Shown piece by piece: positions 2,366 through 58,902 of a DNA stretch of 64,000 nt (position 1 is its first letter; every line of letters begins with the position of its first letter). A program made the translations under genes and the position numbers. The stretch is from Lytechinus pictus (Eukaryota). The stretch covers positions 23,374,001 through 23,438,000 of the forward strand of contig NC_087248.1 of NCBI RefSeq assembly GCF_037042905.1, written 5' to 3'. The notes below the pieces were generated by a model that had not been told where the DNA came from, did not search any database, and saw nothing but the letters and a program-made list of their open reading frames with translations.

Positions 2366-3749
2366 TTAAGTTGTTGCCTCTCTCTAGATAATCAAAACTA
2401 TTCCTAAAGAGAGAGACTCTAATCTTCTCTATTTGCACTGCTGTTCTACCACCAACAAATTATGCAATTTTCATCAGAAACCTAATAATATCAAGGCCAA
2501 GTAATGTTATTCAAAAGTTGAAGGGCCACTCTACAATCTGATTTATTTTCTCAATAATGGATTTTTTGTTTGCATTTAATAATACCATTGGATAAAATTG
2601 AATTAACAGGCATATTGAATTCCAGCAAGATGAAAAGTTTAATATACAGAGCGTCCCACTAAAAATAAAAAACAAAGAAAAAAATAGACAAATAACTTTA
2701 CCATTGTAAAGCTTAGTCTCCTCTTTCAACCGGTATGACTTAGGAGATTCCTCATTAACGCATGAGTGAGGATAAACAATTTGAAGAAAGAATAACAATT
2801 TGGTTGGCAGGCGGTATCTGAATTTTAAAAAGAAAATCAAATGTTCAAAAGGTTCAATATACTAGTATGATCTTACATTTGATAGCTCAATCACAGAAAA
2901 TAAATCATTTTTTTCTGTGAAGCACTGTATAAGCTCTGAATGATCAAGGGTAATAAAACAATATTAACTTGCAAAGCAAAAGACATGATATTAGAAAATC
3001 TCATTACTATACCTACAGTATGTATCACTGTAAAATCAACAATAAAATTAATATCTCACAATTCATGCGGGTATGAAAATTATCAATTATCATTTCATTT
3101 TATATTATAATGTTAAATACTTTTGAGACGGGAAAATATATTTGGGAATGCATGACAAAGTTTAAAGAGAAAATCAACCCCCACAAAGGTTTCACAAGAA
3201 ATAATTGGATATGTAGGGAGCCTATATGAAACTTCATGAATTTATTGAAATTAATTCCTAATGAAATGATATTAAAAAAAAAAAATGCTTTTCATACAAT
3301 TTACATTATGCTTCTCTTAAACATCTTGCATTATTCATAAGCATTTTCAAGCAACAATGTCATGAACAGCTAGTTCATGGGATACAAAACTGTTACTTAT
3401 AATTTATCAAATTTAATTGTGTGGTTTACACGCACAAATGCTAATATTTCCCTAGATCAAACCATTTTCTCATACACAACAGAAATATAGTCTAGTACAT
3501 TGACTTCATTCTTGGGAAGCAAAATAATTATCAGCATCACATCTTTCATTTCATATCCCTGCACAGCGCACCGACACGTAAGTGAACATGGGGGACCACA
3601 TAAACAAGCTACACCCAATGTTCATTCATGCACACACTCGGGAGTGACAGCTTAGATTGTACGAATATCAACCAATCAATGAACCCTAGGCTTGTGAAAC
3701 CAGACAGCCATGACATCTACAATTAAGACCTCGTTCAGAGACGACGACA

Positions 3750-4570
3750 TCACATGATCTAGCGTTGATATGAGCTCCCCACAGGAGACTTATATTGGAT
3801 GCCAATTTGAAGATTTTCACATGATCTACCACTGATATGAACTCCCCACGGGGGACTTCTATTAGTTGCCAATTTTAAACTTTTGACATTAACTTGTGAT
3901 TCGAACATAAAGGGGACTTACAGCAGTAGCAGATTTGTCAAATTTTACTTCATGTTGTCATTATATAAATACAATGGCACTGATATTTCCCATGATCTTT
4001 CATGAACATGAACTCTGCACAGGGGACTTAATACTGGTTGCCATGAATTTCTCATGATCTTCCACTGATATGAACTAATCAAATGCGATTAAAATTGGTT
4101 GCCAATTTGCAGAATTTAAACATGATCTACTCCAGATATGAACTCCCCACAGGGGACTTATATCAGTTACTAGTAATGCAAGTTTGAAGATTTTGACATG
4201 AAAGAAAAAAATACTAACTCTATACAGGAGAATTGGTTGCCAATTTGACAAGAATTTGGTGGAACATCTAATGAAAAGTTTTGTTTACTGACTAATTTGC
4301 TCTCGGCCAATCAGATGCAAGGATTTCAGCAGCTTATCACAGACATCAGTGAAAAATCAGTGTGTGTTTCATTTAATTAAATGCTTCCAAGAAATGAACT
4401 CTACAGCAGACTCGGTTGCTGATTTGCAAATTATAACATGATCTACTCCTGATATGAACTCATCACAGGGGAATAATATCAGTTGCCAATTTGCAGATTT
4501 CAACAAGATCCACCCTGATACATTTTGTATGATCACATCACTGGGGAATACTAGTCCTGATATGAGCTCA
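3750..4570. repeat. Degenerate ~60-bp minisatellite
   Basis: Recurrent catgatctac..tgatatgaactccccacaggggacttatattggttgccaattt, roughly ten decayed units, interrupted by a MITE relic at about 4255-4395. Confidence 0.8.
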
Positions 4571-4572
4571 CT

Positions 4573-5300
4573 GGTTCCATGACATTTGCTCTACAGCGAC
4601 AATTGCTCCGATCAAATATCTGCACATTAAGCCAAACATAAAATCTAAATAAACCCTAATAATCCTTATCTTTATATTATTCTGAACCAAGACTCTATTA
4701 CAATCCTAACTCTAACCCTGGGCTTTCTGAGATGTTACAACCAGACCAAATGTCGCAGGAGCAAATGTCGTATGCCTAACTCACCCTGGGCCCTCTGAGA
4801 TATTAAGACCAGAGCAAATGTCGCAGGAGCAAATGTCGTATGCCTAGCTCTAACCCTGGACCCTCTGAGATATTACGACCAGAGCAAATGTCGCAGGAGC
4901 AAATTTCGTATGCCTAACTCATCCTGGGCCCTCTGAGATATTAAGACCAGAGCAAATGTCGCAAGAGCAAATGTCGTATGCCTAACTCACCCTGGGCCCT
5001 CTGAGATATTACAACCAGAGCAAATGTTGCAGGAGCAAATATCGTATGCCTAACTCTAACCCTGGGCCCTCTGAGATAATACGACCAGAGCAAATGTCGC
5101 AGGAGCAAATGTCGTATGCCTAACTCTAACCCTGGGCCCTCTGTGATATTAAGACCAGAGCAAATGTCGTATGCCTAACTCTAACCCTGGGCCCTCTCTG
5201 ATATTAAGACCAGAGCAAATGTCGTATGCCTAACTCTAACCCTGGGCCCTCTGAGATATTAAGACCAGAGCAAATGTCGCAGGAGCAAATGTCGTATGCC
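4573..5300. mobile_element. Non-autonomous element whose 3' end is amplified into a 70-bp tandem array
   Basis: The 5' catgacatttgctc is inverted relative to the 3' gagcaaatgtcgtatgcc. Nine units of ctaactctaaccctgggccctctgagatattaagaccagagcaaatgtcgcaggagcaaatgtcgtatgc occupy 4706-5300 (68-70 nt, two of 55 nt). Confidence 0.8.
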
Positions 5301-6544
5301 AAACTCACCACAGGAAGATTAGAACAGTATATCTTTTGTAATTTGCTTTATTACCTTATTAAAACATTGCTGATGTTCAAGCTCTCCTGATTATGATATA
5401 CCAATCCAATCATTTCAAAATCATTGCTGTCTATATTATTAAGAGAAATATTCAGTCTCATTTCTTTTTATGAATGAAGCAACAATTATAATTTCTGAGT
5501 AAAAAAACATCTCCAATGACTACATTCATCATGTTTTTTCAACAACAAAAAAAGAAATATTCCCCAGTTCAACATATTTGCTAACTAGTATTCATTTAAT
5601 GCAATATGCATCAAATGCAAATTTCTAGTCAAACCATTCTGTTTAAAAAGAAATTAGCAGATACATGTATTAACTCATGCAAATGATTAAGTAAATAATG
5701 AAAATAATAACAATTAATATACATCTAAATTAAAGGAAGTAAATTTTGAAATTATGTCACATTCCCATTCAAGCATATCAGCAGAAAATAAGAATAAATT
5801 CCAAATGATTTGAAGAGTGAAAAGATCTTGCAATTCATGCCGTGCACTTCCCATTCTCCTAACGAAAGTATCAACGTTAGAAAAACATAAGAAAAATAAA
5901 ACATAAGCAAGGAAGTCGATATGAAGGACTCATTCACAAAATAAACTGTGTTTGATCAATCATGCCAATAAATTTGGACGGGAAGCTAGAAGAAAAAATA
6001 TGGGAAAAACCCTGGTGGGTATGCAAGAAAGCATCAACAAAAAAAGACGAAAATGGGAACACGACAAATGGAAAGGATGTCAAAATTTGATCAAACATGT
6101 CACTCAATGCAAGAGAGTGGTAGTCTTTCCACTCATGGTCCAATTTCTCTGATTTCCACCCGTTATTTCCAATTTGCCAAAATGCATTGTGACAAATGCG
6201 CTAAATGCGTTTGATCTGATCCGTCCCGTGACATGCAAGGGCATGCACGTTTTTACCGTTGCCATGGCGATTCAACAGCAGGATGGATGCCGGGGTTATA
6301 TGGGTGAACTGGGTGCTGTATGGGGGGGGGGGGGTAGGCAGAGGGGGTGGGGGAGTGACATTAGAAGCATTTGGTAGTTTAAGATGACGAACAAAATACT
6401 AGGTAACTTACAGCTATATTTATGTGTTTATCAAATTAATATGAATTTCAATACAAAATGATTATATTGCACTTTATAGGAGGGTTGTGGCAGAGTAAAG
6501 ATTAATTCATTTTGATAAGATCAAGAACATTTCCGCTATATTAA

Positions 6545-6915: not shown

Positions 6916-8686
6916 TTAAGGTGGAAGGAGTCCACATTTACAGGAATTGTATCATAAAGATAAATGAATAATAAGCATAGGGTGATCCTACTTTACTTTT
7001 ATGGGAAGAACGTGGCATAGAAATGATTGACGTCGATTGATTATAAGAGGTCTTGGAAAATGAATGAAATGGCTATAACACCTGCTGTGACAATACTGCA
7101 TGTAAAAAGAGGCTTATTACAGCTATCTTAAACATTTCACACATTTTGTACCGGAACCAGTTGTTTCCTGTACAAAATTGAATGATATTACAGAATTCAG
7201 TACTCGGCATTTGAAACTCGATTAGACCGATTCATACGAAATTGTTCCAAATGGATATTCATTTCGTGAATAACTCCAAAATACAATGCCTTTTTATATC
7301 CAATGGCAAGCACATTGAAACCAATTTAATGATGGATTCTACTTTATTCATGCGATCAACTCTTGCCCTACCCCAACTGAAATTATGTACGCCGTATTGC
7401 TGCTACACATATATTTGATAGACAAATAATTTGGGGTATTCAATCATCTTCGCAGCCATGCATACAATAGCTTGTTGTTGAATGCTGGTATACGATGTGA
7501 ATTACATTAGAGCAAAATAATGACACTTTTTGCAGTATGAATATGATCCGGCATGATGGTGGACTGGTGGTACAGGGTATTTAAAAAAAGGCACATCAGT
7601 ACAAATATTTTATAGCGTGGGACTTAATCATACAGTGAAATAGTTGATTTTTCTATACACTGTAGCCTAATGAAATTAATCATAAATCCAACTTTGTAGG
7701 ATCAAACTCAAAATTAGATCCAACAGAATCCACTAAAATGAATACACATATGTTTAATTTGTATTCATAAAAAATATGTGCCAATCGATGCTGGTAGAAA
7801 TGAGTTAATTGCTGAAAAATGTGTAAGATACTGTAACCATAGCATTCCAGGAAGTGGTCTGGCCTTTTCTTAAACAATGATAATACACTGACCCACATAT
7901 GCTTATCTGAGTTGGTGATCACCAGATTTAGCTTTTTAGCTTTTAAAGATTTCACAAAGCTAGATTTTTTTATAAATTTCTCCGATCTAGATCTTCAATA
8001 TGGACAAAATTAACCTTGATTTTGAAGACATTTTATAAAATCGTGGTTTGCTGCGACTTCATTAAGTGATCTTCAACTCAGGTATAGGTGTTGAGGTGTA
8101 GAGTTGTTGTGGCTCCGAGGATAAGTCTTTGGACTTTGGGAAGGTACATGTATTTATCTACATTTGCCTCTCTCCACTCATGTGTAGTAAATGGGTACCT
8201 GGTAGGAAGGAATAGCTTGAATACTATAGCACCTGATCAGACAAACAGTGCCAAGGCAAGGGTATAGAAACACCGTCGCAAGTGCTATATGAATGTCGCA
8301 AGTAACCAGCCACCCCAAAAAAAAAACAATAAGTTGCGAGGGAAGGTTCTCTATAAATGGCCAAAAAGCTTTGATATTATTTATTCTCGGCTGCTTAGAA
8401 GTCTTACAGAGAATACACAGTATGCATATTTCATGCTTGAGTGAAAACCCCAAACTTCAGACCTTGTTTTCTCTGACTTCTTGAAGCACTCACTGAATAC
8501 CTTCTGCATTCAATCAATAGTACTTGGGTAGGTTATCTTTGACCAATTTCGACGGGTTAGGTATCATTTCGAAGCTTAGGACGTGCTCTTTCAAGCTAAA
8601 TTAAAGTCTCAAAATTGATTTTGGGCGACTCATTGCTGGTTTTGGGGTGGATGATCGCATAAGACACGACTGGTTAAAGTTCTTAC

Positions 8687-8837
8687 CGGTTGATGCTTGC
8701 ATGCTTTCTCTATATGAAGTCTCCCGTCAGCTCTCTTGCTATCCTGAATGGTTCTCTCTGCTTCTGATAACCATGATGCTAAATCTCTCATATCACAGTG
8801 AAACTGTCTCCATTGGTCGAAGCATCGCTGGAATTGA
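8687..8837 (-). CDS. DMD: Dystrophin-family rod-domain exon, equivalent to human DMD exon 44
   Basis: Acceptor tgttctcttgcag|T, donor CCG|gtaaga. Reads QFQRCFDQWRQFHCDMRDLASWLSEAERTIQDSKRADGRLHIEKACKHQP, compared with recalled human RFDRSVEKWRRFHYDIKIFNQWLTEAE. The phase-2 acceptor completes GG+T=Gly from the previous exon. Confidence 0.93.
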
Positions 8838-9084
8838 CTGCAAGAGAACAAGATACCATCATCTCAAAAGAAATGCTCACCCGTTTGTTTGCCGTCCCAT
8901 GCCAAAAGGAAGCAGCTCTAATTTTTTTTTCTTCAAGAAATTGCCCTTTTCGTGATTTTTTATATTTCCTGCATGCTCTACATGATGGTAAAGAAATTGG
9001 AGTCATCGCAGCCCCCCTATCTTTGGAATATAGACATTTAAAAATCAAGCAACAATGACACAGTTTCCCCATTTCCTCACAACA

Positions 9085-9330
9085 GGTGTGTTGGCTCAGT
9101 TGGTAGAGCGTCCATCTCACAACCAGGAGCTCAAACCCCAGCCGCGTCAGACCAAAAGACATTAAAAGATGGGAGTTGCTACTACCCTGTTTGGCGTTCA
9201 ACAATTGAAGGGATAGAGCCTCGTCGATCTGATGTTGCACAGTGGCTGCCGGGCCCACTATAAATTGGGCAAAACAAATTTTCAGAGTATTTCATTTCTG
9301 ATGTCTATTTCGAACAATATTTTATGGATT
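9085..9330 (+). mobile_element. tRNA-derived SINE with a Meta-domain-like core
   Basis: A box tggctcagttggtagagcg. The core gtcagaccaaaagacattaaaagatgggagttgctactaccctgtttggcgttcaaca resembles the MetaSINE central domain as I recall it. The tail is (TTTCA)-like. Confidence 0.7.
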
Positions 9331-9379
9331 TTCATTTTTTTTTCATTTTAAACATTCCACAGGGTTGCATCCTCAGTCC

Positions 9380-9555
9380 ATAGAGCGGGGGTTTCAAATT
9401 CCGGTGGCCCAGGTTCGATTCCAACTTTGTGCGCTGGTGCCCTTTGGTAAGGCATTAATCCTCATTACCAGGTCCCTCGGAAAGGACCTCAAGCTGTCAG
9501 TCCTCTGGTTGCTTGCTGATAAGCATTCATGCTTTCTTAGCAATCAGGTAAAATA
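9380..9555 (+). mobile_element. tRNA-derived SINE, family A
   Basis: B box ggttcgattcc and a body highly similar to 760-932. Confidence 0.8.
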
Positions 9556-10026
9556 TCACCACCACCATCCTTTTGACATAGGATGGCAGTTCTCATATTA
9601 CACAAATGATATTCATCAACAGGGCAATAGTACTAATACAGTAATACACACAAGGCAAATTTAGAACAGTTTTAACACCAATAACACATAGCCAACTGTT
9701 CAAAGGTAACAAATATTTCTATATTCAATGTTTCTATGTTCCTCTATCTGTCTGTCTCTCTCCCTCTCTCTCTATATATACACAGTCTGTTTTTCTGTCT
9801 GTCTCTCTCTTTCTGTTTAATATCTTTCTATCTCTTTCTGTCTCGATCTGTTTGTGTCTTTTCACGTCTGTTTGTCCCTTTTTTTCTTTCTCACTCTGTC
9901 TCATTATTTCTTCTTTTCTCACTCTGTCTGTCTGTTTCCCTCTCCCTCTCTCTCTTTCTGTCTCTCAGTGTGTCTGCGTGTATGTCTGTCTGCCTTTCTC
10001 TCACACTCACATTCTGATAGTCTTAC

Positions 10027-10411
10027 CCATATCTTTCTTCATCTCCGTTGAGTCTTTGCCAGTTCTCTCTGAGGCGATCCATCATCTCCTGAATCTCTTT
10101 GCGTTGCGTTGCACCTCTCTCTCAGTGTGTATGTCTGTCTGTCTCTCACACTCATTCTCTGATAGACTTACCCATGCCTTTCTTCATATTCTCTGTTGAG
10201 TCGTTGCCAGTTATCTCTGAGGCGATCCATCATCTCCTGAATCTTTTTGCGTTGCGTTGCACCTCTCTCTCAGTGTGTCTGTCTGTCTGTCTCTCACACT
10301 CATTCTCTGATAGACTAACCCATGCCTTTCTTCATATTCTCTGTTGAGTCGTTGCCAGTTATCTCTGAGGCGATCCATCATCTCCTTAATCTTTTTGCGT
10401 TGTGTTGCACC
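10027..10411 (-). repeat. Three tandem partial copies of the 3' half of the exon-43-like exon, each with a splice donor
   Basis: Copies at 10320-10411, 10172-10263 and 10027-10115 match exon segment 10482-10573. Their donors are gttagt, gtaagt and gtaaga. Spacers are GA/CA microsatellite, and the period is 145-162 nt. Confidence 0.95.
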
Positions 10412-10481
10412 TCTCTCTCAGTGTGTCTGTGTGTCTGTTTGTCTGTCTCTCACACTCACACTCATTCTCTGATAGACTTAC

Positions 10482-10654
10482 CCATGCCTTTCTTCATATT
10501 CTCTATTGAGTCTTTGCCAGTTCTCTCTGAGGCGATCCATCACCTCCTGAATCTCTTTGCGTTGCGTTGCACCGACCTGAGACACCGCCACATGCTCCTT
10601 CTCTTTCACCGACTCGATGGACGGAGCCAAGTCATCCAACGATTCCTTGATAGC
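10482..10654 (-). CDS. DMD: Dystrophin-family rod-domain (spectrin repeat) exon, equivalent to human DMD exon 43
   Basis: Acceptor tttatcttttgcacag|GCT, donor CATGG|gtaagt. The 173 nt read AIKESLDDLAPSIESVKEKEHVAVSQVGATQRKEIQEVMDRLRENWQRLNREYEERH(G). This aligns by eye with the recalled human exon 43 peptide NIKDSL...QWEKVNKMYKDRQG, with the same length and phase (0->2). Confidence 0.92.
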
Positions 10655-11879
10655 CTGTGCAAAAGATAAAACAACTGTTATTCATGAGGAATATATCACC
10701 ATTACATTCATCCTGATTATCAGGGGTGGATCCAGGATTTTCCAAAAGGGTGGGGGCACATTTTCCCCCGAGGAAAAAAAAAGGTCCTCACTTGTGTATA
10801 AACGACATATATTCCCATTATGATTAAATGATTAAAATGATTCAATTAAATGATTTGCTGTAACTTTCAAAGGGGGGGGGGCACACTTGTGTAAGAATGG
10901 CATTTTTACATTAAATAATATTGACAATGTATGACTCTCAAAGGGGGGGGGCATGGGTCAGATGTGCCCCCTTATTATCTTTCCTCACTTTATTCATCCA
11001 TACAGTAGCTCTACAACAAGGTAAGAAACAGGGGTGGGACAGTAAAGCAGTTGACGCTACTGCATGTCACAATTAAATGTGTTTTTTTTCTCACATGTTT
11101 TCTGATTTATATTTTTTATCTGTTTCGGTCTTTGTACTCAAAATTCCATTTGACATATATTTCCTGTTTGTAAATTCAATTAAATTCTATACATTTTCAA
11201 TATTTCATGAAAACAATTTATTTAGAATCATGTTTTAACAAATACAATTTAAATTTCAATGATGAATACCAGGTGCTGGTGTAAGGCAAACACCAACCAA
11301 AACACTGTACTTGACATGAAACTGGTGTTTATATTGAACTCACTAGGTGTTGAGCTATCAAGTATCATTGTCATGAATCCACATTGATGTTGGAGCTATG
11401 TGGGGCAACATCATTCATGCTCTCAACATTTACATCACACATACATCAACACCAACAAGATCACCAATATCAACACCAACACCTGTCAACGCCATAATCA
11501 CCACCAACAATAACACACCAACATCAACATCATCACACTACCAACACCAAATCCATCATCACCACCACCACCTACACTAAGATACCAACATCAACACTAA
11601 CACCATCAGCAACACCAACACTAAAACACCAACACCATCACCACCACCACCACTAAAATACCAATACCAACACCAACTAGTTGTAACTGACTACTGGTTA
11701 TGTACATGAGCAAGGAAGCTCTCGGTGCCGAGTCCAGGTGAGGTCCGAAGAGGATCAATGAATCAATGAGGATGTTATCATATCATATCACGCTGGATGA
11801 CCATTCTCAAAGAGATCGCATCCCCAAAATGGGTCATTCCTAATTAAATGCCCTCAGCATCCAATGCACTAACTTTCTC

Positions 11880-15506: not shown

Positions 15507-17778
15507 ATAGAGTACCGAAGTGTGATGTCACAAAAAACTTTTTTTGCATTTCAGCGTTTTTGATACCATATTTTGGCAGCGCATGATGAAAAAACCCCAC
15601 TACCAAAATTTGGAGGCAATCGGTCCATGGGGGCCTTAGATATGACCTCATGAATACATAATTAGCCCCATTGAAGTCAATGTATTACTAGTATTGGCCT
15701 GGGGCGGTATTCTGAAAACGTTCTTATCTTAATTTTGTTCTTATCTACGTCATGTTCTCAAATTGGTATTCTGAAAACGTTCTTATCTTTTGTTCTTATC
15801 TTTTTTCTTATCTTGCTCTCCCTCCTATGCTGAGCGCGTAAATTTATAACTCGCGCATATAATACAAAAGCGCGCTAAAAGATAAGAACAAAATAAAGAT
15901 AAGTGGTATTCTGAAAACGTTCTTATCTTTTATCTTTCTTATCTCTTTACGATATTTATGATAATATTTAAGATAGCTAGAGGGTTATCACATCTCAGGA
16001 TGTCCGCGTTCTTTCTTTCCCAAAATCGATGGCCACTGGTAGTAACAAATATTCTTTCCACCCTTTCTTTCATTCACCCTTTATTTTGCCCATCTCTTTT
16101 TCTATCTCTTATTTCTTTCTGTATTTATTTTCTCCTTTTCTTCCTTTCTGTTTGTCTGTCTTTCTTTCTTCCTTTCTTTCATTTTTCATTTATATCTCTT
16201 GTTTATTCTTTTGAATCTTTTCTTTTCTTCCTTATTTTTCTTTTTCTTTGTTTTCCTTTTTCTTCTTTACTAAGTCTTTATTTTCCCCCTCTTTCTTCCT
16301 TTCTTTCTTCCCCTTTTTTTTTCTTCCTTCACTTTATTTTTTTTTCAGTATCTTTTTTATTTCTTCATTCTTTTTCTTTCTTTCATTTATTCTTTCGTCT
16401 TTATATTTGTTTTATTTATTCATTTTGTTTTTTCCTTATTTTTCTTTGTTTTCCTTCTCTTATCATCTTTTTCTTGTTATTTTTTATTCTTTCCATCAAT
16501 CTTAATTCGTTTCTTTTTTTTCATTCATTCTTTATTTTTCCCGCCTTTTTATTTTCCTTTTTCGTTTTTTTTTCTTTATTTCTTTACCGTTCGTTCCTTC
16601 TATCTTTCTTTAGTCTTTATTTTTGCTTTAATTATCCTTTCATCTTTTCTCTTTCTTCCTTTTTTTCTTTCTTTCTCTCCGAGTCTCTCTCTCTCTTTCT
16701 TTATTTCTGGTCTATTTTCCTTTTTTCTCTCTTCCTTTACTTTTTACAGTTTTTTAATTCCTTCCTTTTCTCTTTTGATTACTTTCTTTCATTCGTTTTT
16801 TTCTATTTTTTTTTCTTTTGGGGTTCTTTTATTCTTTCATTTTATCCTTTTTAATCTTTTTATTTTGTCCCTTTTGGTTTTTTTTTGTAAAGTTTCTTTC
16901 TTTTTCCTTCTTTATTTTCTTTCATTTTTTATTCCTCTTTTTATCATTAATAATCGTTCTATTCATTCCTCCTTTTTCTTTCTTTTATTCATTCTTTTTT
17001 TCTTTCTTTTAATTTTCTATTTTCTTTTAAGTTCTTTTTGCTTGCTTTCTTTTGTTTACCTTTTCTTTTTTTCATTGTTTTCTGCTTTGTTCCTTTCCTT
17101 TTTTTTTTGCTTCGTTCTGACCCTTTACTGTCTTCTTTCTTTCTTTGTTTTTTTTTCTTCCTGCTTAATTTTTTATTCGTACCTGCTTTATTTACCTTTT
17201 TTCTTTAATTTCTTTCTTTATTTTGTGCACGTGTCTCGAAATAATAATCAGTCATTGCGTATAAAATGCCTATCTCGCGCAATGCGCCAGAAACAGTGTA
17301 CGCGCAGCGCCCATGATATTCTCTTCACATAAGGAACGCTTCTATTGGTTAAACGTACAATATAACACGCATTTTGATTGGTAATATCCTAAAAATGGGC
17401 GTGTTGAAGATAAGAAGGAGGCAGTCCTTACAGAGATAAGAACGCGTTAAGAAGATTTTCAGAATACCGATTTGCAATGATTTTAGCGTCTTCTTATCTC
17501 ATTGAGATAAGAACAAAGATAAGAACGTTTTCAGAATACCACCCCTGGTTCCTAACTTTTAGAACTTTTGGGTTGTGGGGGTTTTTCACCATGCTCTACC
17601 AAAATATGGTATCAAAAATGCAAAAAAAAGCAAAAAGTGAAGGAAAAAATTCAAACTTTTTAGCCCTCCAAAGGCCTTTTATTGAGTCAAATGATATCAA
17701 AATATTATTACACAATAAATAAATGAACAACATTTCTCTCAAAGTGAAAATTGATGACATTACACTTCGGTACTCAAT
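15507..17778. mobile_element. MITE interrupted by a nested Harbinger-like element
   Basis: Outer TIRs gagtaccgaagtgtgatgtca / tgacattacacttcggtactc, with further inverted arms tttttgataccatattttgg / ccaaaatatggtatcaaaaa. Confidence 0.8.
15702..17544. mobile_element. Harbinger-like non-autonomous element with a 1.2-kb T-rich interior
   Basis: TIR gggcggtattctgaaaacgttcttatctt / aagataagaacgttttcagaataccaccc. CTG target duplication at 15699-15701 and 17545-17547. Subterminal repeats of the TIR motif. Confidence 0.85.
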
Positions 17779-18479: not shown

Positions 18480-19480
18480 GATTAATACCCCATATAGAGA
18501 GATCACATGTCATACATGCAGCATGATGCATGCTTGATATTAAGAGAGTAGGGAAGGGGGGGGGGTGTGGTTGAGGAGATGGGGGAGGGGTGGGGCTGGG
18601 ATTTACATTGTTTTTTTATCAATGTACATCATAAAGAGTGATCACATTTCATAGCTAGATCTATGCTTGATATTAGGAGGGCAGGGAAGGGGTAAATGAG
18701 TGGGGGCTGAGATCTCCCTTTTTTATATTAAATATACATCATATAGATCGATAACAAGTCATAGTTAGATGCATGCTTGATATTAGGAGGGTGGGGAAGG
18801 GGTAATTGAAGGGGGGGCTGGCATTTACATTTTTTTATTAATACCCGATATAGAGAGATCACATGTCATAGCTAGAAGCATGCTTGATATTAGGAGGGCG
18901 GGAAAGGGGTGAATGGGGGGGGGGGGGCTGGCAATCCTGGCATTTACTTTTATGATTAATACCCCATATAGAGAGATCACATGTAATAGCTTGCATGATG
19001 CATGCTTGATATTAGGAGGGCAGGGTAGGGGGGTGGGGGCTGGGATTTACATTTTTTTATCAACATACATCATAAAGAGTGATAAAATTTCATAGCTATA
19101 TAGATCTATGCTTGATATTAAAAGGGCGAGGAAGGGGGGGGGTGGAGGGCTGGGATTTACATTGTTTTATCAATATACATCGCATAAATAGATCACATGT
19201 CATAGCTAGACGCATGCTTGAGAAGGGTGGGAAGAGGTGACTGAGGGAGGGGGATGGGATTTGCATTTGTTATCAACATACGCCATATAGAGCAATCACA
19301 TTTCGTAGCAAGATGCATACTTGATATTTACGAGGGTGGGGGAAGGGGCAGGCGTGAGGGGGGAATCACATTCATAATTTATTATACCTCATATACAGAA
19401 ATTACGTCGATGTATGCTTAATAATATGAGGGTGGGGGAATCAAGGGGTGGGTGGGAGGGCTTGAATAGTTAGATGCATA
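18480..19480. repeat. G-rich minisatellite, ~9 units of ~105-140 bp
   Basis: Unit ataccccatatagagagatcacatgtcatagctagatgcatgcttgatattaggagggtggggaagggg...gggggctgggatttacattttt. Confidence 0.9.
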
Positions 19481-25315: not shown

Positions 25316-25454
25316 GTATATAATATTCAATATTGTATGCATATAACATAATGTTGTTTTGACTCTTGTAACTGTCTTCAATTATAACCAAACCTCGCAT
25401 TACCAATTTTGTTCTGAACTCTTTAAATCCATGAAATTTATAAAATTTATTCAT

Positions 25455-25661
25455 GCATTTTTTTTTGACATTTCTAAAAGGGTTATTTTTCAATTTCAAA
25501 TGATTTGAATTCACATCTTAATGCTTTTGAATTCAAATCTGTAAGATTAAAACCTATTCATACATTTTTTTTACATTTCTAAAAGGGTTATTTTTCAATT
25601 TCAAATGATTTGAATTCACATTTTGATGCTTTTAAATTCAAATCTGTAAGATTAAAACCTA
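25455..25661. repeat. Direct tandem duplication of ~107 bp
   Basis: catttctaaaagggttatttttcaatttcaaatgatttgaattcaca...aaatctgtaagattaaaaccta occurs twice. Confidence 0.9.
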
Positions 25662-35600: not shown

Positions 35601-37201
35601 CCTCTATACAACGATTCTTCTATCAATGTGAGGGGAAGCATCTACTTCTTCCCAAACGGAAGCAAGCACTATCTACTACAAGGTAGCACTCTTGTTTTTG
35701 AGGTTTGGCTCTGGCCATGGCCTCCATCCCTTAAAAATCAATCTAAATTATGTGGAAAGAACGTTAACGAAATCTTGCTTGATAGAATGTATACAATGAA
35801 TGATATCTTCAAGGCCGCGTCAATAGTTACAGTGTGTTTGTTTTCGTCAGATTCTTAGCTTTGGCGCCTTAGCAATGCCAGATCACTTTCTTTCTCTCTC
35901 TCTCTCTCTCTCTCTCAGAGCGCACTCCTAAAAGGCTTGCTCAGATATGGCAAGTGTAACCAGCTGATACAGTATTTCAAAGGAAGGAAGTAACTTTGCC
36001 TAGGATTGTAAACTAAAATCCCTGATCCAACTACTGAATCGGTGTGATTGAGCGGCAGTATCATCATCCCAGTGACCTACGTGTGAAACAAAGTCAAAGG
36101 ACTGGCGCCCTTTTGGTGAGGAGTTTATTCCCATTACCAGGTCCCTTAAAGAGGACCTTAAGCCATAAGTCCTCTGGTTTTTAACTAATAAGCATTCATG
36201 CTTTCTTGGCAGTAAGGTAAATAACCACCACTAACCATAACCTACAGTCAGTCGTGATTTCAGTCTGGCAAATACATACGAACCAGCAGACTTGCATAGT
36301 GTCTACCCCCTCAAGTGCTCAACTACTTAAATCTGGCCAAGTTTTTTACCCATAATGCAACAGTCTGAGCAATGAAGTATTGTATAAACATAGACCAACT
36401 TGAATGATTCATACAGCAATAATCATGTTTCCAAATAGCAAAGTAAGTACTTTTCCTCTCAATCCAGTGAGGTTTTTCTATACTAACATGATTATAATTA
36501 TGCTGATTTATTGTCTGTATTATTAATAGTAACTACAAAAGGCCCGTATTCTGAAGTCAGGTTTAACTTAGACCACGGTCTAAATATGTGCTAAAATTAT
36601 GGGGAGCCCCCAAAAACCAAAAAATTCAGCTTATATTGTATATTTTTTATATTTACTATTTTGTTTCCCTTTGCTTTCATAATGAAGAAAATATTTCAGT
36701 TCTCATTCTGAGACAGTTTAAATGATTTGAGTGTCAAAAGAATGAATAAATTGAATGTGTACTAATAGTGATTTGTGCCCCAATTGGCTCTCCATAGCTG
36801 AACTACAACTTTAAACCGGGTTAAATTTAAACCGGAGTTCAGCATACGGGTCAATGGGAATTTTTAAGACCATCTATCTATAATGCACGGTCAATGAGAG
36901 ACCGCACATAGTTGGTGTTGGTCATTTCGCTCTCTCTGATCATGCGGGGTCCCATTGCATAAAAGTTACTATTTTGCCATCCAATGGTAACTAACTACCA
37001 TGGTAACGATGCTCATCAGCCAATCAAAATCAAGGATTTCGGGAAAGATACCATTGCAAGGCAAACTTACCATAATGGTTACTTTTATGCAACGGCGGCC
37101 AGAAAGGAATGGGCAGACATTAAATCTTATTATCAAAGCGGTCAGATTTTAATTAAGATTTCAGTAATTTCATCTGTAATTAAGGAAGACCATGCTAGTA
37201 A

Positions 37202-37850: not shown

Positions 37851-38061
37851 NNNNNNNNNNNNNNNNNNNNNNNNNNNNNNNNNNNNNNNNNNNNNNNNNN
37901 NNNNNNNNNNNNNNNNNNNNNNNNNNNNNNNNNNNNNNNNNNNNNNNNNNNNNNNNNNNNNNNNNNNNNNNNNNNNNNNNNNNNNNNNNNNNNNNNNNNN
38001 NNNNNNNNNNNNNNNNNNNNNNNNNNNNNNNNNNNNNNNNNNNNNNNNNNNNNNNNNNNNN
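37851..38061. other. Assembly gap
   Basis: Run of N. Confidence 1.
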
Positions 38062-49608: not shown

Positions 49609-49906
49609 NNNNNNNNNNNNNNNNNNNNNNNNNNNNNNNNNNNNNNNNNNNNNNNNNNNNNNNNNNNNNNNNNNNNNNNNNNNNNNNNNNNNNNNNNNNN
49701 NNNNNNNNNNNNNNNNNNNNNNNNNNNNNNNNNNNNNNNNNNNNNNNNNNNNNNNNNNNNNNNNNNNNNNNNNNNNNNNNNNNNNNNNNNNNNNNNNNNN
49801 NNNNNNNNNNNNNNNNNNNNNNNNNNNNNNNNNNNNNNNNNNNNNNNNNNNNNNNNNNNNNNNNNNNNNNNNNNNNNNNNNNNNNNNNNNNNNNNNNNNN
49901 NNNNNN
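49609..49906. other. Assembly gap
   Basis: Run of N. Confidence 1.
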
Positions 49907-57721: not shown

Positions 57722-58902
57722 AACAAGTGGAACGCCTCTGGCAGTCTCGCCTGCATTACGCAATTTAATATAGCAGCAGTGCTAACTTTGAAAACTACTA
57801 TAAAATAATCATTCACAAAAACATCATTCATATAATGACATAATACCACGTTCATTGACCATAAATGACATTTGAACGGAGACTTAAGACTGTCAACTAC
57901 ACCCATGTCCACATTTCATTCACTCTATCCATAAACTTTCAAAGTTATGATGGCACTTCAACAACATGGCCTAAGTTTATTGACCTTAACTGACCTTTGA
58001 CTTGGTTTTGTGACCTGAAACTCACAGGGGATGTTCAGTGATGCTTGATTACTCTTATATCCCAAGTTTTATGAACTAGATCCATCAACTTTCAGAGTTA
58101 GGATGGTAATTTAACATATACCCCCAACACGGCCAAAGTTCATTGACCTTAAATGACCATTGACCATTGACAATGGTCATGTGACCTGAAACTCGCACAG
58201 GATATTCAGTGGTACTAGATTAACCTAATGTCCAAGTTTCATGAACTAAATCCATAAATTTTCAAAGTTATGATGGTAATTCAACAAATACCCCCAACTT
58301 GGCCAAAGTTCATTGAACCTAAATGACCTTTGACCTTGGTCATGTGACCTGAAACTCAGGCAGGATGTTCACTAATACTTGATTAACCTTATGTCCAAGT
58401 TTCATGGACTAGATCCATAAATTTTCAAAGTTATGATAGTAATTCAACAAATACCCCCAACTTGACCAAAGTTCATTGACCCTAAATGACCTTTGACCTT
58501 GGTCACGTGACCTGAAACTCGAGCAGGATGTTCACTAATACTAGATTAACCTTATGCCCAAGTTTCATGAACTAGGTCCATATACTTTCTAAGTTATGAT
58601 GTCATTTCAAAAACTTAACCTTCGGTTAAGATTTTGAAAATAATTTTCCCAACATGGTCTAAGTTCATTGACCCTAAATGACCTTTGACCTTGGTCATGT
58701 GACCTGAAACTCAGGCAGGATGTTCAGTAATACTTGATTAACCTTATGTCCAAGTTTCATGAACTAGGTCCATATACTTTTTAAGTTATGATGTCATTTC
58801 AAAAACTTAACCTTAGGTTAAGATTTGATGTTGCCGCCGCCGCCGCCGCCGTCGGAAAAGCGGCGCCTATAGTCTCGCTCTGCTATGCAGGCGAGACAAA
58901 AA
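57722..58902 (+). mobile_element. Helentron/HINE-like non-autonomous element with internal tandem repeats
   Basis: 5' aacaag start. Subterminal inverted repeat gtctcgcctgcat / atgcaggcgagac. 3' hairpin gtctcgc...gcgagac followed by aaaaa. (GCC)n microsatellite. Five ~163-192-bp units containing tgacctttgaccttggtcatgtgacctgaaactc. Confidence 0.8.

What the first reader, a model, noticed from the sequence alone, without database searches (positions are those of the whole stretch)
10027..10573. Half of a dystrophin exon plus its donor repeated in tandem three extra times, all copies still in frame
Seen: the copies read GATQRKKIKEMMDRLRDNWQRLNREYEERHG, GATQRKKIQEMMDRLRDNWQRLNREYEERHG and GATQRKEIQEMMDRLRENWQRLNGDEERYG. 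There are no stops, the only indel is a net 3 nt, and all GT donors are kept. The copies share variants absent from the main exon (ATG-ATG vs GTG-ATG, AAC vs AAT), so this is not a simple assembly stutter. An AG one base before each GGT would make symmetric phase-2 cassettes (93/93/90 nt) adding extra spectrin helix segments, but the introns would be only ~55-69 nt with no pyrimidine tract. Reading through the true donor hits GGG TAA at once, so using the distal donors would give truncated or NMD-targeted RNA. Inference: a natural decoy-donor array, or exon duplication caught at an early stage.
Basis: partly seen in the sequence, partly recalled or inferred. Interest (0 to 1): 0.75.

Follow-up and report, generated by a model that had tools for sequence, protein, structure and literature searches.

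The report
Splice-donor minisatellite in dystrophin intron
The last 92 bases of a dystrophin exon, its splice-donor signal and about 56 bases of intron have been copied in tandem three more times inside the following intron, but assembled RNA joins only the first, genuine donor to the next exon, so this is an ordinary, tolerated "border" minisatellite of a kind already described.

Summary
On the minus strand, TRF finds a 148-base unit in 3.9 copies (9983-10573, 90% match). Unit 1 is the real exon end (exon 10654-10482) plus its GT donor. Units 2-4 lie in the intron and keep GT donors and an open frame.

The gene is a dystrophin-type gene of an invertebrate. All named homologues are invertebrate dystrophin or utrophin. 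Matches are collinear over about 146 kb, and dystrophin-type EF-hands lie downstream on the same strand.

Spliced RNA contigs from two samples join 10482 directly to 8837. They show nothing over the array. Amphioxus and crustacean dystrophins have no extra 31-residue segments at this junction.

The "cassette" acceptors have no pyrimidine tract (0.30-0.35 pyrimidine against 0.70 at the real acceptors). The open frames are what neutral drift predicts: P(no stop) is 0.53-0.60, and the silent share is not in excess (p = 0.18).

This is a boundary-spanning minisatellite, known from human F7, IFI6, CBS, LMNB2 and PDGF and from amphioxus "mirages". The first donor is normally the one used. Earlier notes of this scan report at least eight more donor-spanning arrays elsewhere in this genome.

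It is a new member of a known kind, of low interest. Rare use of the distal donors and copy-number variation were not testable.

The parts
10482..10654 (-). Authentic coding exon (173 nt, starts in phase 0, ends with 2 extra nt). It encodes the end of a spectrin-like repeat. Its last 92 nt (10573-10482) form the exon part of repeat unit 1.
   Evidence: RNA contigs X2 rec 9 and X7 rec 24 lie on 10482-10656. The acceptor is ...TTTTGCACAG|G. Pfam Spectrin positions 46-100/105, E 9e-4, below the cut-off. Amphioxus dystrophin residues 134-190 align here.
10480..10481 (-). Authentic 5' splice site GT (TGG|GTAAGT), the donor used in RNA.
   Evidence: In both RNA contigs 10482 abuts 8837. Sequence.
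10412..10573 (-). Repeat unit 1 (162 nt): 92 nt of exon, the donor and a 70-nt intron tail that carries 14 extra microsatellite bases.
   Evidence: Alignment A1; TRF.
10264..10411 (-). Repeat unit 2 (148 nt). Its pseudo-donor after 10320 is weakened to GTTAGT. It is the sister of unit 3.
10116..10263 (-). Repeat unit 3 (148 nt). Its pseudo-donor after 10172 is identical to the true one (TGG|GTAAGTC).
   Evidence: X1 contig 10209-10322 covers the unit 2 / unit 3 junction with 1 mismatch.
9983..10115 (-). Repeat unit 4, the most diverged: a 3-nt deletion, a pseudo-donor GTAAGA after 10027, and a decayed tail.
9737..9982 (-). Purine-rich (GACA)n/(GA)n microsatellite stretch of the intron that follows the array. 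The right-hand breakpoint of the duplication lies in sequence of this type.
8687..8837 (-). Next coding exon (151 nt), the start of the next spectrin-like repeat. Acceptor ...TCTCTTGCAG|T, donor G|GTAAGA.
   Evidence: RNA contigs lie on 8685-8837 directly next to 10482. Splice sites. Amphioxus dystrophin 191-236 aligns at 61% identity.

Best explanation
This is a boundary-spanning ('mirage'-type) intronic minisatellite in a dystrophin-type gene.

Inferred origin: a tandem duplication had its left breakpoint inside the exon, just before GGTGCAAC at 10573. Its right breakpoint lay about 56-70 nt into the intron, in (GACA)n/(GA)n microsatellite sequence, with about 1 nt of microhomology. That event copied the exon's last 92 nt, the GT donor and the start of the intron. 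Unequal exchange or replication slippage then raised the number of units to four. Unit 4 is the oldest. Units 2 and 3 come from the most recent duplication.

Shown: the first unit is still the working exon end, and the spliceosome pairs its donor (10482) with the acceptor at 8837. Units 2-4 are therefore removed as intron.

Inferred: the distal donors stay silent because they have no upstream acceptor to define an exon, and because 5' splice sites are chosen from the upstream side. The array has no function of its own. Its open frames are left over from its recent origin.
For: Array and register.

Splicing: RNA contigs of two samples (X2 rec 9, 2976 nt; X7 rec 24, 3152 nt) place 8685-8837 and 10482-10656 back to back. 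Both have zero depth over 9618-10400.

Homologues: amphioxus dystrophin residues 190|191 fall exactly at this exon-exon junction. Crustacean dystrophins also run straight on, with no 31-residue insert.

Neutral decay:
- Pairwise differences are 2-9% in the exon-derived part and 3.5-16% in the intron-derived part.
- I count about 10 substitutions, 6 replacement and 4 silent. The expected silent share is 0.23 (p = 0.175).
- P(no stop after 8-10 random substitutions) is 0.53-0.60.
- By contrast, in the real next exon 4 of 4 differences in X7 and 7 of 8 in X3 fall on third codon positions (positions, frame).

No usable acceptors: 0.30-0.35 pyrimidine before the pseudo-AGs against 0.70 at both real acceptors.

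Background: 7.3% of the window lies in arrays of period 20 or more. Six of these other arrays have units of 100 nt or more.

Precedent: human F7, IFI6, CBS, LMNB2 (100-bp units) and PDGF (81-bp units) (PMC1557585), and amphioxus 'mirages' with 150-160-bp units that do not disturb splicing (PMC3087553).
Against: The RNA evidence comes from assembled contigs. These drop rare isoforms and cannot measure levels, so minor use of donors 10320, 10172 or 10027 is not excluded. The kind of the runs is only guessed as RNA; the multi-exon joins show that these contigs are spliced. Copy number was not confirmed by a spanning read. The exon-derived parts are somewhat less diverged than the intron-derived tails, but the tails are microsatellite-like and mutate and align differently. 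The same exon's donor is also spanned by independent arrays in two distant species, which a purely random model explains only with P of about 0.1.
Confidence: 0.85

Rival explanations
1. It is a working decoy-donor array. The distal donors would be used at a regulated rate, giving transcripts that run into GGG TAA and are destroyed by nonsense-mediated decay, and so tuning dystrophin output. Alternatively they would recruit U1 snRNP to help recognise the exon.
For: Three extra GT donors are kept, and one has the same 10 bases around the cut site as the true donor and the same 24 exon bases before it. An in-frame TAA follows the true donor directly. Independent donor-spanning arrays sit at the same exon in L003 and in a shrimp.
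Against: Both spliced contigs use only the first donor, and nothing from the array appears in these RNA runs. The copies show no constraint beyond neutral expectation, and one donor has already weakened to GTTAGT. Arrays of this kind in human genes are silent or by-products (PMC1557585). The coincidence among species has P of about 0.1, given a tandem-repeat density of about 7%.
Confidence: 0.07
2. It is a nascent exon duplication. Units 2-4 would be, or would be becoming, 93/93/90-nt in-frame cassette exons that add 31-residue helix segments to the rod.
For: The geometry is symmetric and in frame, with an AG one base before each GGT and open frames in all copies.
Against: There is no pyrimidine tract (0.30-0.35 against 0.70) and the pseudo-introns are only 55-69 nt. 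No RNA contig holds a cassette. Homologues have no such insert. The unit length of 148 is not a multiple of three. The open frames are expected by chance. Adding 31 residues would break the three-helix register of a spectrin-like repeat of about 105 positions (inference from the Pfam model length).
Confidence: 0.02
3. It is an assembly artefact: a single copy stuttered by the assembler.
For: No read or contig that spans the whole array was seen. Tandem arrays are prone to wrong copy numbers in assemblies.
Against: The units differ by 2.7-10% with a nested, tree-like pattern: three states are shared by units 2 and 3, and two are shared by units 2-4. The X1 contig 10209-10322 holds the novel junction from intron tail to exon-like start with 1 mismatch. 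In a second organism (X3), a contig that crosses the acceptor from intron into exon stops at 10509, inside the repeated part, as expected if it too has extra copies. This last point is only suggestive.
Confidence: 0.05

Closest known systems
Human exon/intron-border minisatellites: F7 intron 7 (37 bp), IFI6/6-16 intron 2, CBS intron 13, LMNB2 (100-bp unit), PDGF intron 4 (81-bp unit), as reviewed and tested in Borensztajn et al. 2006, PMC1557585
   Same: The first monomer spans the exon-intron boundary, so the donor is repeated in the intron. As in F7, LMNB2 and PDGF, only the most upstream, authentic donor is seen in use. The unit size is of the same order as in LMNB2 and PDGF.
   Different: The exon share of the unit is much larger here: 92 nt, against 4 nt in F7. 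There are only four units, and they have already diverged by 3-10%, whereas the F7 pseudo-sites are identical. The host is an invertebrate and the gene is dystrophin. Polymorphism in copy number, and activation of a pseudo-site when the true donor is lost, were not tested here.
'Mirage' minisatellites of amphioxus (Adh3, Canestro et al. 2002, PMC117041; globin genes BflGb6/BflGb9, Ebner et al. 2010, PMC3087553)
   Same: They are tandem duplications of an exon/intron boundary in an invertebrate deuterostome, with units up to 150-160 bp and 81-100% identity between units. Splicing stays regular. The end unit is the most diverged and the inner units are the most alike.
   Different: Length instability and differences between haplotypes were shown there and were not tested here. 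The orthologous amphioxus dystrophin intron itself has no array.
Tandem exon duplication giving cassette or mutually exclusive exons
   Same: A coding segment is repeated in tandem within a gene, in frame on paper.
   Different: Only the 3' half of the exon was copied, without an acceptor or a pyrimidine tract. The copies are absent from the RNA contigs.

Membership tests
Boundary-spanning ('mirage' / F7-type) minisatellite | Head-to-tail tandem units of minisatellite size (about 10-160 bp) in two or more copies | tested here: met
   TRF: period 148, 3.9 copies, 90% matches; alignment A1.
Boundary-spanning ('mirage' / F7-type) minisatellite | The first unit contains the authentic exon-intron junction, so the splice-donor sequence is repeated within the intron | tested here: met
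   Unit 1 is 10573-10412 and holds the donor used in RNA (10482|GT). GT is kept after 10320, 10172 and 10027.
Boundary-spanning ('mirage' / F7-type) minisatellite | Regular splicing persists: the most upstream donor is the one used, or the main one | tested here: met
   Two spliced contigs from two samples join 10482 to 8837. There is no array sequence in those runs. Rare isoforms cannot be seen in contigs.
Boundary-spanning ('mirage' / F7-type) minisatellite | Copy number varies between alleles or individuals | not testable with these tools
   The single read-laying run returned short contigs only. None spans the array.
Dystrophin/utrophin family gene | Rod of spectrin-like repeats | tested here: inconclusive
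   Pfam Spectrin matches the exon (model positions 46-100) and the next exon (positions 2-28), with E 9e-4 and 6e-3. Both are below the curated cut-off because single exons are short.
Dystrophin/utrophin family gene | The closest named homologues are dystrophin or utrophin, and they align collinearly | tested here: met
   Five of the six phmmer hits that carry a name (nine hits at E up to 1e-3) lead to Branchiostoma, Panulirus, Halocaridina or Cherax dystrophin/utrophin, by their own name, their UniRef entry or a cluster member. The two exons match consecutive amphioxus residues 134-190 and 191-236. Crayfish protein P0013 matches five places on C4 minus strand, in order, over 146 kb.
Dystrophin/utrophin family gene | Dystrophin-type EF-hand region (PF09068, PF09069) C-terminal to the rod | tested here: met
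   Both families match above the cut-off on C4 minus strand at 23202.8-23197.5 kb. That is downstream of the window's exons and in the right order. It was not shown that they belong to the same transcript (about 180 kb away). WW and ZZ domains were not tested.
Tandem exon duplication (cassette exons) | Each copy has its own functional 3' splice site and appears in mRNA | tested here: not met
   Pyrimidine fraction is 0.30-0.35 before the pseudo-AG against 0.70 at the real acceptors. No cassette is present in the RNA contigs. Homologues have no insert.
Regulated unproductive splicing (decoy or poison sites coupled to nonsense-mediated decay) | Transcripts that use the alternative sites exist, and the sites are conserved beyond neutral expectation | tested here: inconclusive
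   No such transcript appears in the contigs, but contigs drop rare forms. There is no excess constraint. One donor has already weakened to GTTAGT.

The most novel reading that the evidence does not exclude
The donor end of this particular dystrophin exon may be a recurrent birthplace of border minisatellites in distant animals. Independent arrays span it in this genome (148 nt x 3.9), in an unidentified invertebrate (L003, 49 nt x 12.3, filling about 85% of a 690-nt intron with 15 AGGTRAG sites) and in the shrimp Halocaridina (118 nt x 1.9). That could point to a local mutational hot spot, or to a benefit of extra U1-binding sites behind this exon.
Probability: 0.06. Interest if true: 0.5.

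Novelty: new member of a known kind. Interest (0 to 1): 0.15.

Why it matters
It matters little for dystrophin biology, because the protein made is the ordinary one. The array is a natural test case for how a spliceosome chooses among equal donors: unit 3 carries a donor with the same 10 bases around the cut site as the true donor and the same 24 exon bases before it, yet it is not seen in use. It adds an invertebrate giant-gene example to the F7/'mirage' class. Together with earlier notes of this scan, it suggests that such arrays are common in this minisatellite-rich genome. That is worth knowing for gene annotation, because the open, exon-like copies can mislead gene predictors.

Tried and rejected
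1. The word-index protein search with the 57-residue exon found nothing. The exhaustive phmmer search was then used.
2. The only other genome hit of the unit (C7, L002) looked like a possible paralogous exon. It is just a (GACA)n microsatellite.
3. An RNA gene or tRNA-derived element in or near the array: Rfam at E up to 0.1 and ARAGORN found none.
4. A gene on the plus strand: the long plus-strand open frames over the array are low in complexity and have no Pfam match.
5. Selection on the copies: the stop-free frames and the silent share do not differ from neutral expectation. My first simulation used a wrong frame and is void.
6. A recurrent hot spot at this exon: 2 of 8 other species or loci have a donor-spanning array. 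At a tandem-repeat density of about 7% this has P of about 0.1, so it is noted but not claimed. Short-read contigs tend to break at arrays, so the 'no array' loci L005, L011, L012 and L013 are weak negatives.
7. One locus (P0016) gave no DNA.
8. Read laying failed twice for machine reasons before it succeeded.
9. Correspondence to a vertebrate dystrophin exon was not tested. The two exons were searched separately by reference, and the joined model was left out.
10. The N runs at 37851-38061 and 49609-49906 were left alone.

Full report
**1. The observation**

The stretch is a real tandem array. TRF reports 9983-10573 with period 148, 3.9 copies, 90% matches and score 888.

Read on the minus strand, the exon-like part of each unit begins with GGTGCAAC at 10573, 10411, 10263 and 10115.

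The four-unit alignment confirms the other details.
- There is one 3-nt deletion, in unit 4.
- GT is kept in every unit: GTAAGT, GTTAGT, GTAAGT, GTAAGA.
- Two states are shared by units 2-4 but not by the exon.

Reading through the true donor gives GGG TAA.

The exon-derived sequence is unique in the 812-Mb genome. The only other hit is a (GACA)n microsatellite.

**2. The gene**

The real exon is 10654-10482 (173 nt). The next exon is 8837-8687 (151 nt). Both have pyrimidine-rich acceptors and GTAAG donors.

Pfam places the first exon on the last half of a spectrin repeat and the second on the start of the next. Both matches are below the cut-off, as expected for single exons.

The word search found nothing. 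The exhaustive phmmer search gave nine hits. Five of the six that carry a name lead to invertebrate dystrophin or utrophin (Branchiostoma, Panulirus, Halocaridina, Cherax), by their own name, their UniRef entry or a cluster member. No vertebrate protein reached E 1e-3.

Local tblastn shows amphioxus dystrophin residues 134-190 on the first exon and 191-236 on the second, the latter at 61% identity.

A crayfish dystrophin/utrophin protein matches five places on contig C4, minus strand, in the right order over about 146 kb. Dystrophin-type EF-hand families PF09068 and PF09069 match above their cut-offs further downstream on the same strand.

"A dystrophin exon" is therefore supported, in an invertebrate. 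Earlier notes of this scan name the sea urchin Lytechinus pictus. I could not check that.

**3. What RNA shows**

One read-laying run was allowed.

Two long spliced contigs from two samples of organism A carry 8685-8837 and 10482-10656 back to back. They are X2 record 9 (2976 nt) and X7 record 24 (3152 nt). The first donor is thus joined to 8837. The two extra bases at each outer end are alignment overhang into the neighbouring exons.

Both runs have zero depth from 9618 to 10400.

Run X1 holds spliced and unspliced pieces. One 114-nt contig (10209-10322, 1 mismatch) contains the new junction between the tail of unit 2 and the exon-like start of unit 3. This supports the array from a second data set.

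In organism B (X3), a contig that crosses the acceptor from intron into exon stops at 10509, inside the repeated part. There is also depth over units 3-4. This hints that the array is shared, but it is not conclusive.

Contigs cannot show rare isoforms.

**4. Do the copies look selected?**

Units 2 and 3 are sisters, with 2 + 2 differences. Unit 4 is the most diverged.

I count about ten substitutions in the exon-derived parts, six replacement and four silent, plus one 3-nt deletion. With a 6.1% chance of a stop per random substitution, P(no stop) is 0.53-0.60. Four silent of ten, against an expected share of 0.23, gives p = 0.175.

Open frames are therefore not evidence of use.

The real next exon behaves differently. 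All four differences in X7 and seven of eight in X3 fall on third codon positions (positions, frame).

**5. The cassette idea**

The 20 nt before each pseudo-AG are only 30-35% pyrimidine, against 70% at both real acceptors. The pseudo-introns would be 69, 55 and 55 nt.

No homologue has an extra 31-residue segment at this junction, and no RNA contig has one.

**6. What it is**

It is a boundary-spanning minisatellite. The left breakpoint lies in the exon. The right breakpoint lies in microsatellite-like intron sequence, with about 1 nt of microhomology.

The window is rich in such repeats. 7.3% of its bases lie in arrays of period 20 or more, and six of the other arrays have units of 100 nt or more.

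The kind is known. Borensztajn et al. 2006 (PMC1557585) list human F7, IFI6/6-16, CBS, LMNB2 (100-bp units) and PDGF (81-bp units). They show for F7 that identical pseudo-sites stay silent because the most upstream donor is selected.

In amphioxus such arrays are called "mirages". Their units reach 150-160 bp and they do not disturb splicing (PMC3087553; Canestro et al. 2002, cited there).

Earlier notes of this scan report at least eight more donor-spanning and two acceptor-spanning arrays in this same genome. I treat these as unchecked leads. They agree with my reading, which I had reached before I saw them.

**7. A coincidence noticed**

The orthologous exon in a distant invertebrate contig (L003, 38% identity) is followed by its own array. 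That array is 49 nt x 12.3 and starts 27 nt before the donor. It makes up about 85% of a 690-nt intron and carries 15 AGGTRAG sites.

In the shrimp Halocaridina the intron sits nine codons earlier. There a weak 118-nt x 1.9 duplication also spans the donor, and it is the only one of 26 mapped exon boundaries that an array spans.

Amphioxus and five other loci show none. Four of those loci are short contigs.

Two of eight, at a tandem-repeat density of about 7%, has P of about 0.1. I record this but do not claim a hot spot.

**8. Other checks**

There is no Rfam family or tRNA in 8000-11500. The plus-strand open frames have no Pfam domain.

**9. Verdict**

The functional readings (decoy device, nascent exons) are not supported. 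The array is a new member of a known kind.

**10. Limits**

No raw reads were available and there was no read spanning the array. Relatives close enough to date the array were not available.

No human sequence was used. The N runs were not touched.

Noticed in passing
L003:4287-4895 (exon about 4139-4312, next exon about 5001-5150): In a distant invertebrate contig (ENA ERZ26052449), the orthologous dystrophin exon end plus its GTGAG donor is repeated 12.3 times with a 49-nt unit and a 195-nt higher-order period. The array fills about 85% of the intron with 15 AGGTRAG sites. A second array (3731-4146) runs up to and just past the exon's acceptor.
   Followed up: partly
L010:41798-42021 (Halocaridina rubra contig JAXCGZ010017428.1): A weak 118-nt x 1.9 duplication (75% match) spans the donor of the corresponding shrimp exon. 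It is the only one of 26 mapped exon boundaries of that gene model that an array spans.
   Followed up: partly
L010:41664-41813 and L012:643-831, compared with window 10482: In two decapod loci the intron lies nine codons upstream (after ...EEWAQ) of its position in this genome, amphioxus and the other loci (after ...ERH-G/R). This is either a shifted intron or an independent one.
   Followed up: no
window 9085-9560 (partial copies at 751-933 and 36102-36229): A dispersed repeat sits in the same intron. Summed contig depth is 10^4-10^5 in all four runs of both organisms, so it is a very abundant interspersed element. ARAGORN finds no tRNA in it.
   Followed up: partly
window 10662-10922: A second high-copy element lies just upstream of the exon's acceptor, with contig depth up to about 9000 and many length-variant joints. 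It has no other copy within the window.
   Followed up: partly
window 4705-5309, 16124-16413, 18592-19348, 25441-25661, 57962-58601, 58469-58826: Six other minisatellites have units of 100 nt or more. 7.3% of the window lies in arrays of period 20 or more.
   Followed up: no
window 8696-8813: Differences in the next exon are 4 in sample X7 and 8 in organism B (X3). They are almost all at third codon positions. This indicates high silent diversity and purifying selection on the real exon.
   Followed up: partly
G000 C17:31827616-31838042 and C11:21003178-21006869: Two further loci carry dystrophin-type EF-hand_2/EF-hand_3 matches. They are probably dystrobrevin-like or other family members.
   Followed up: no
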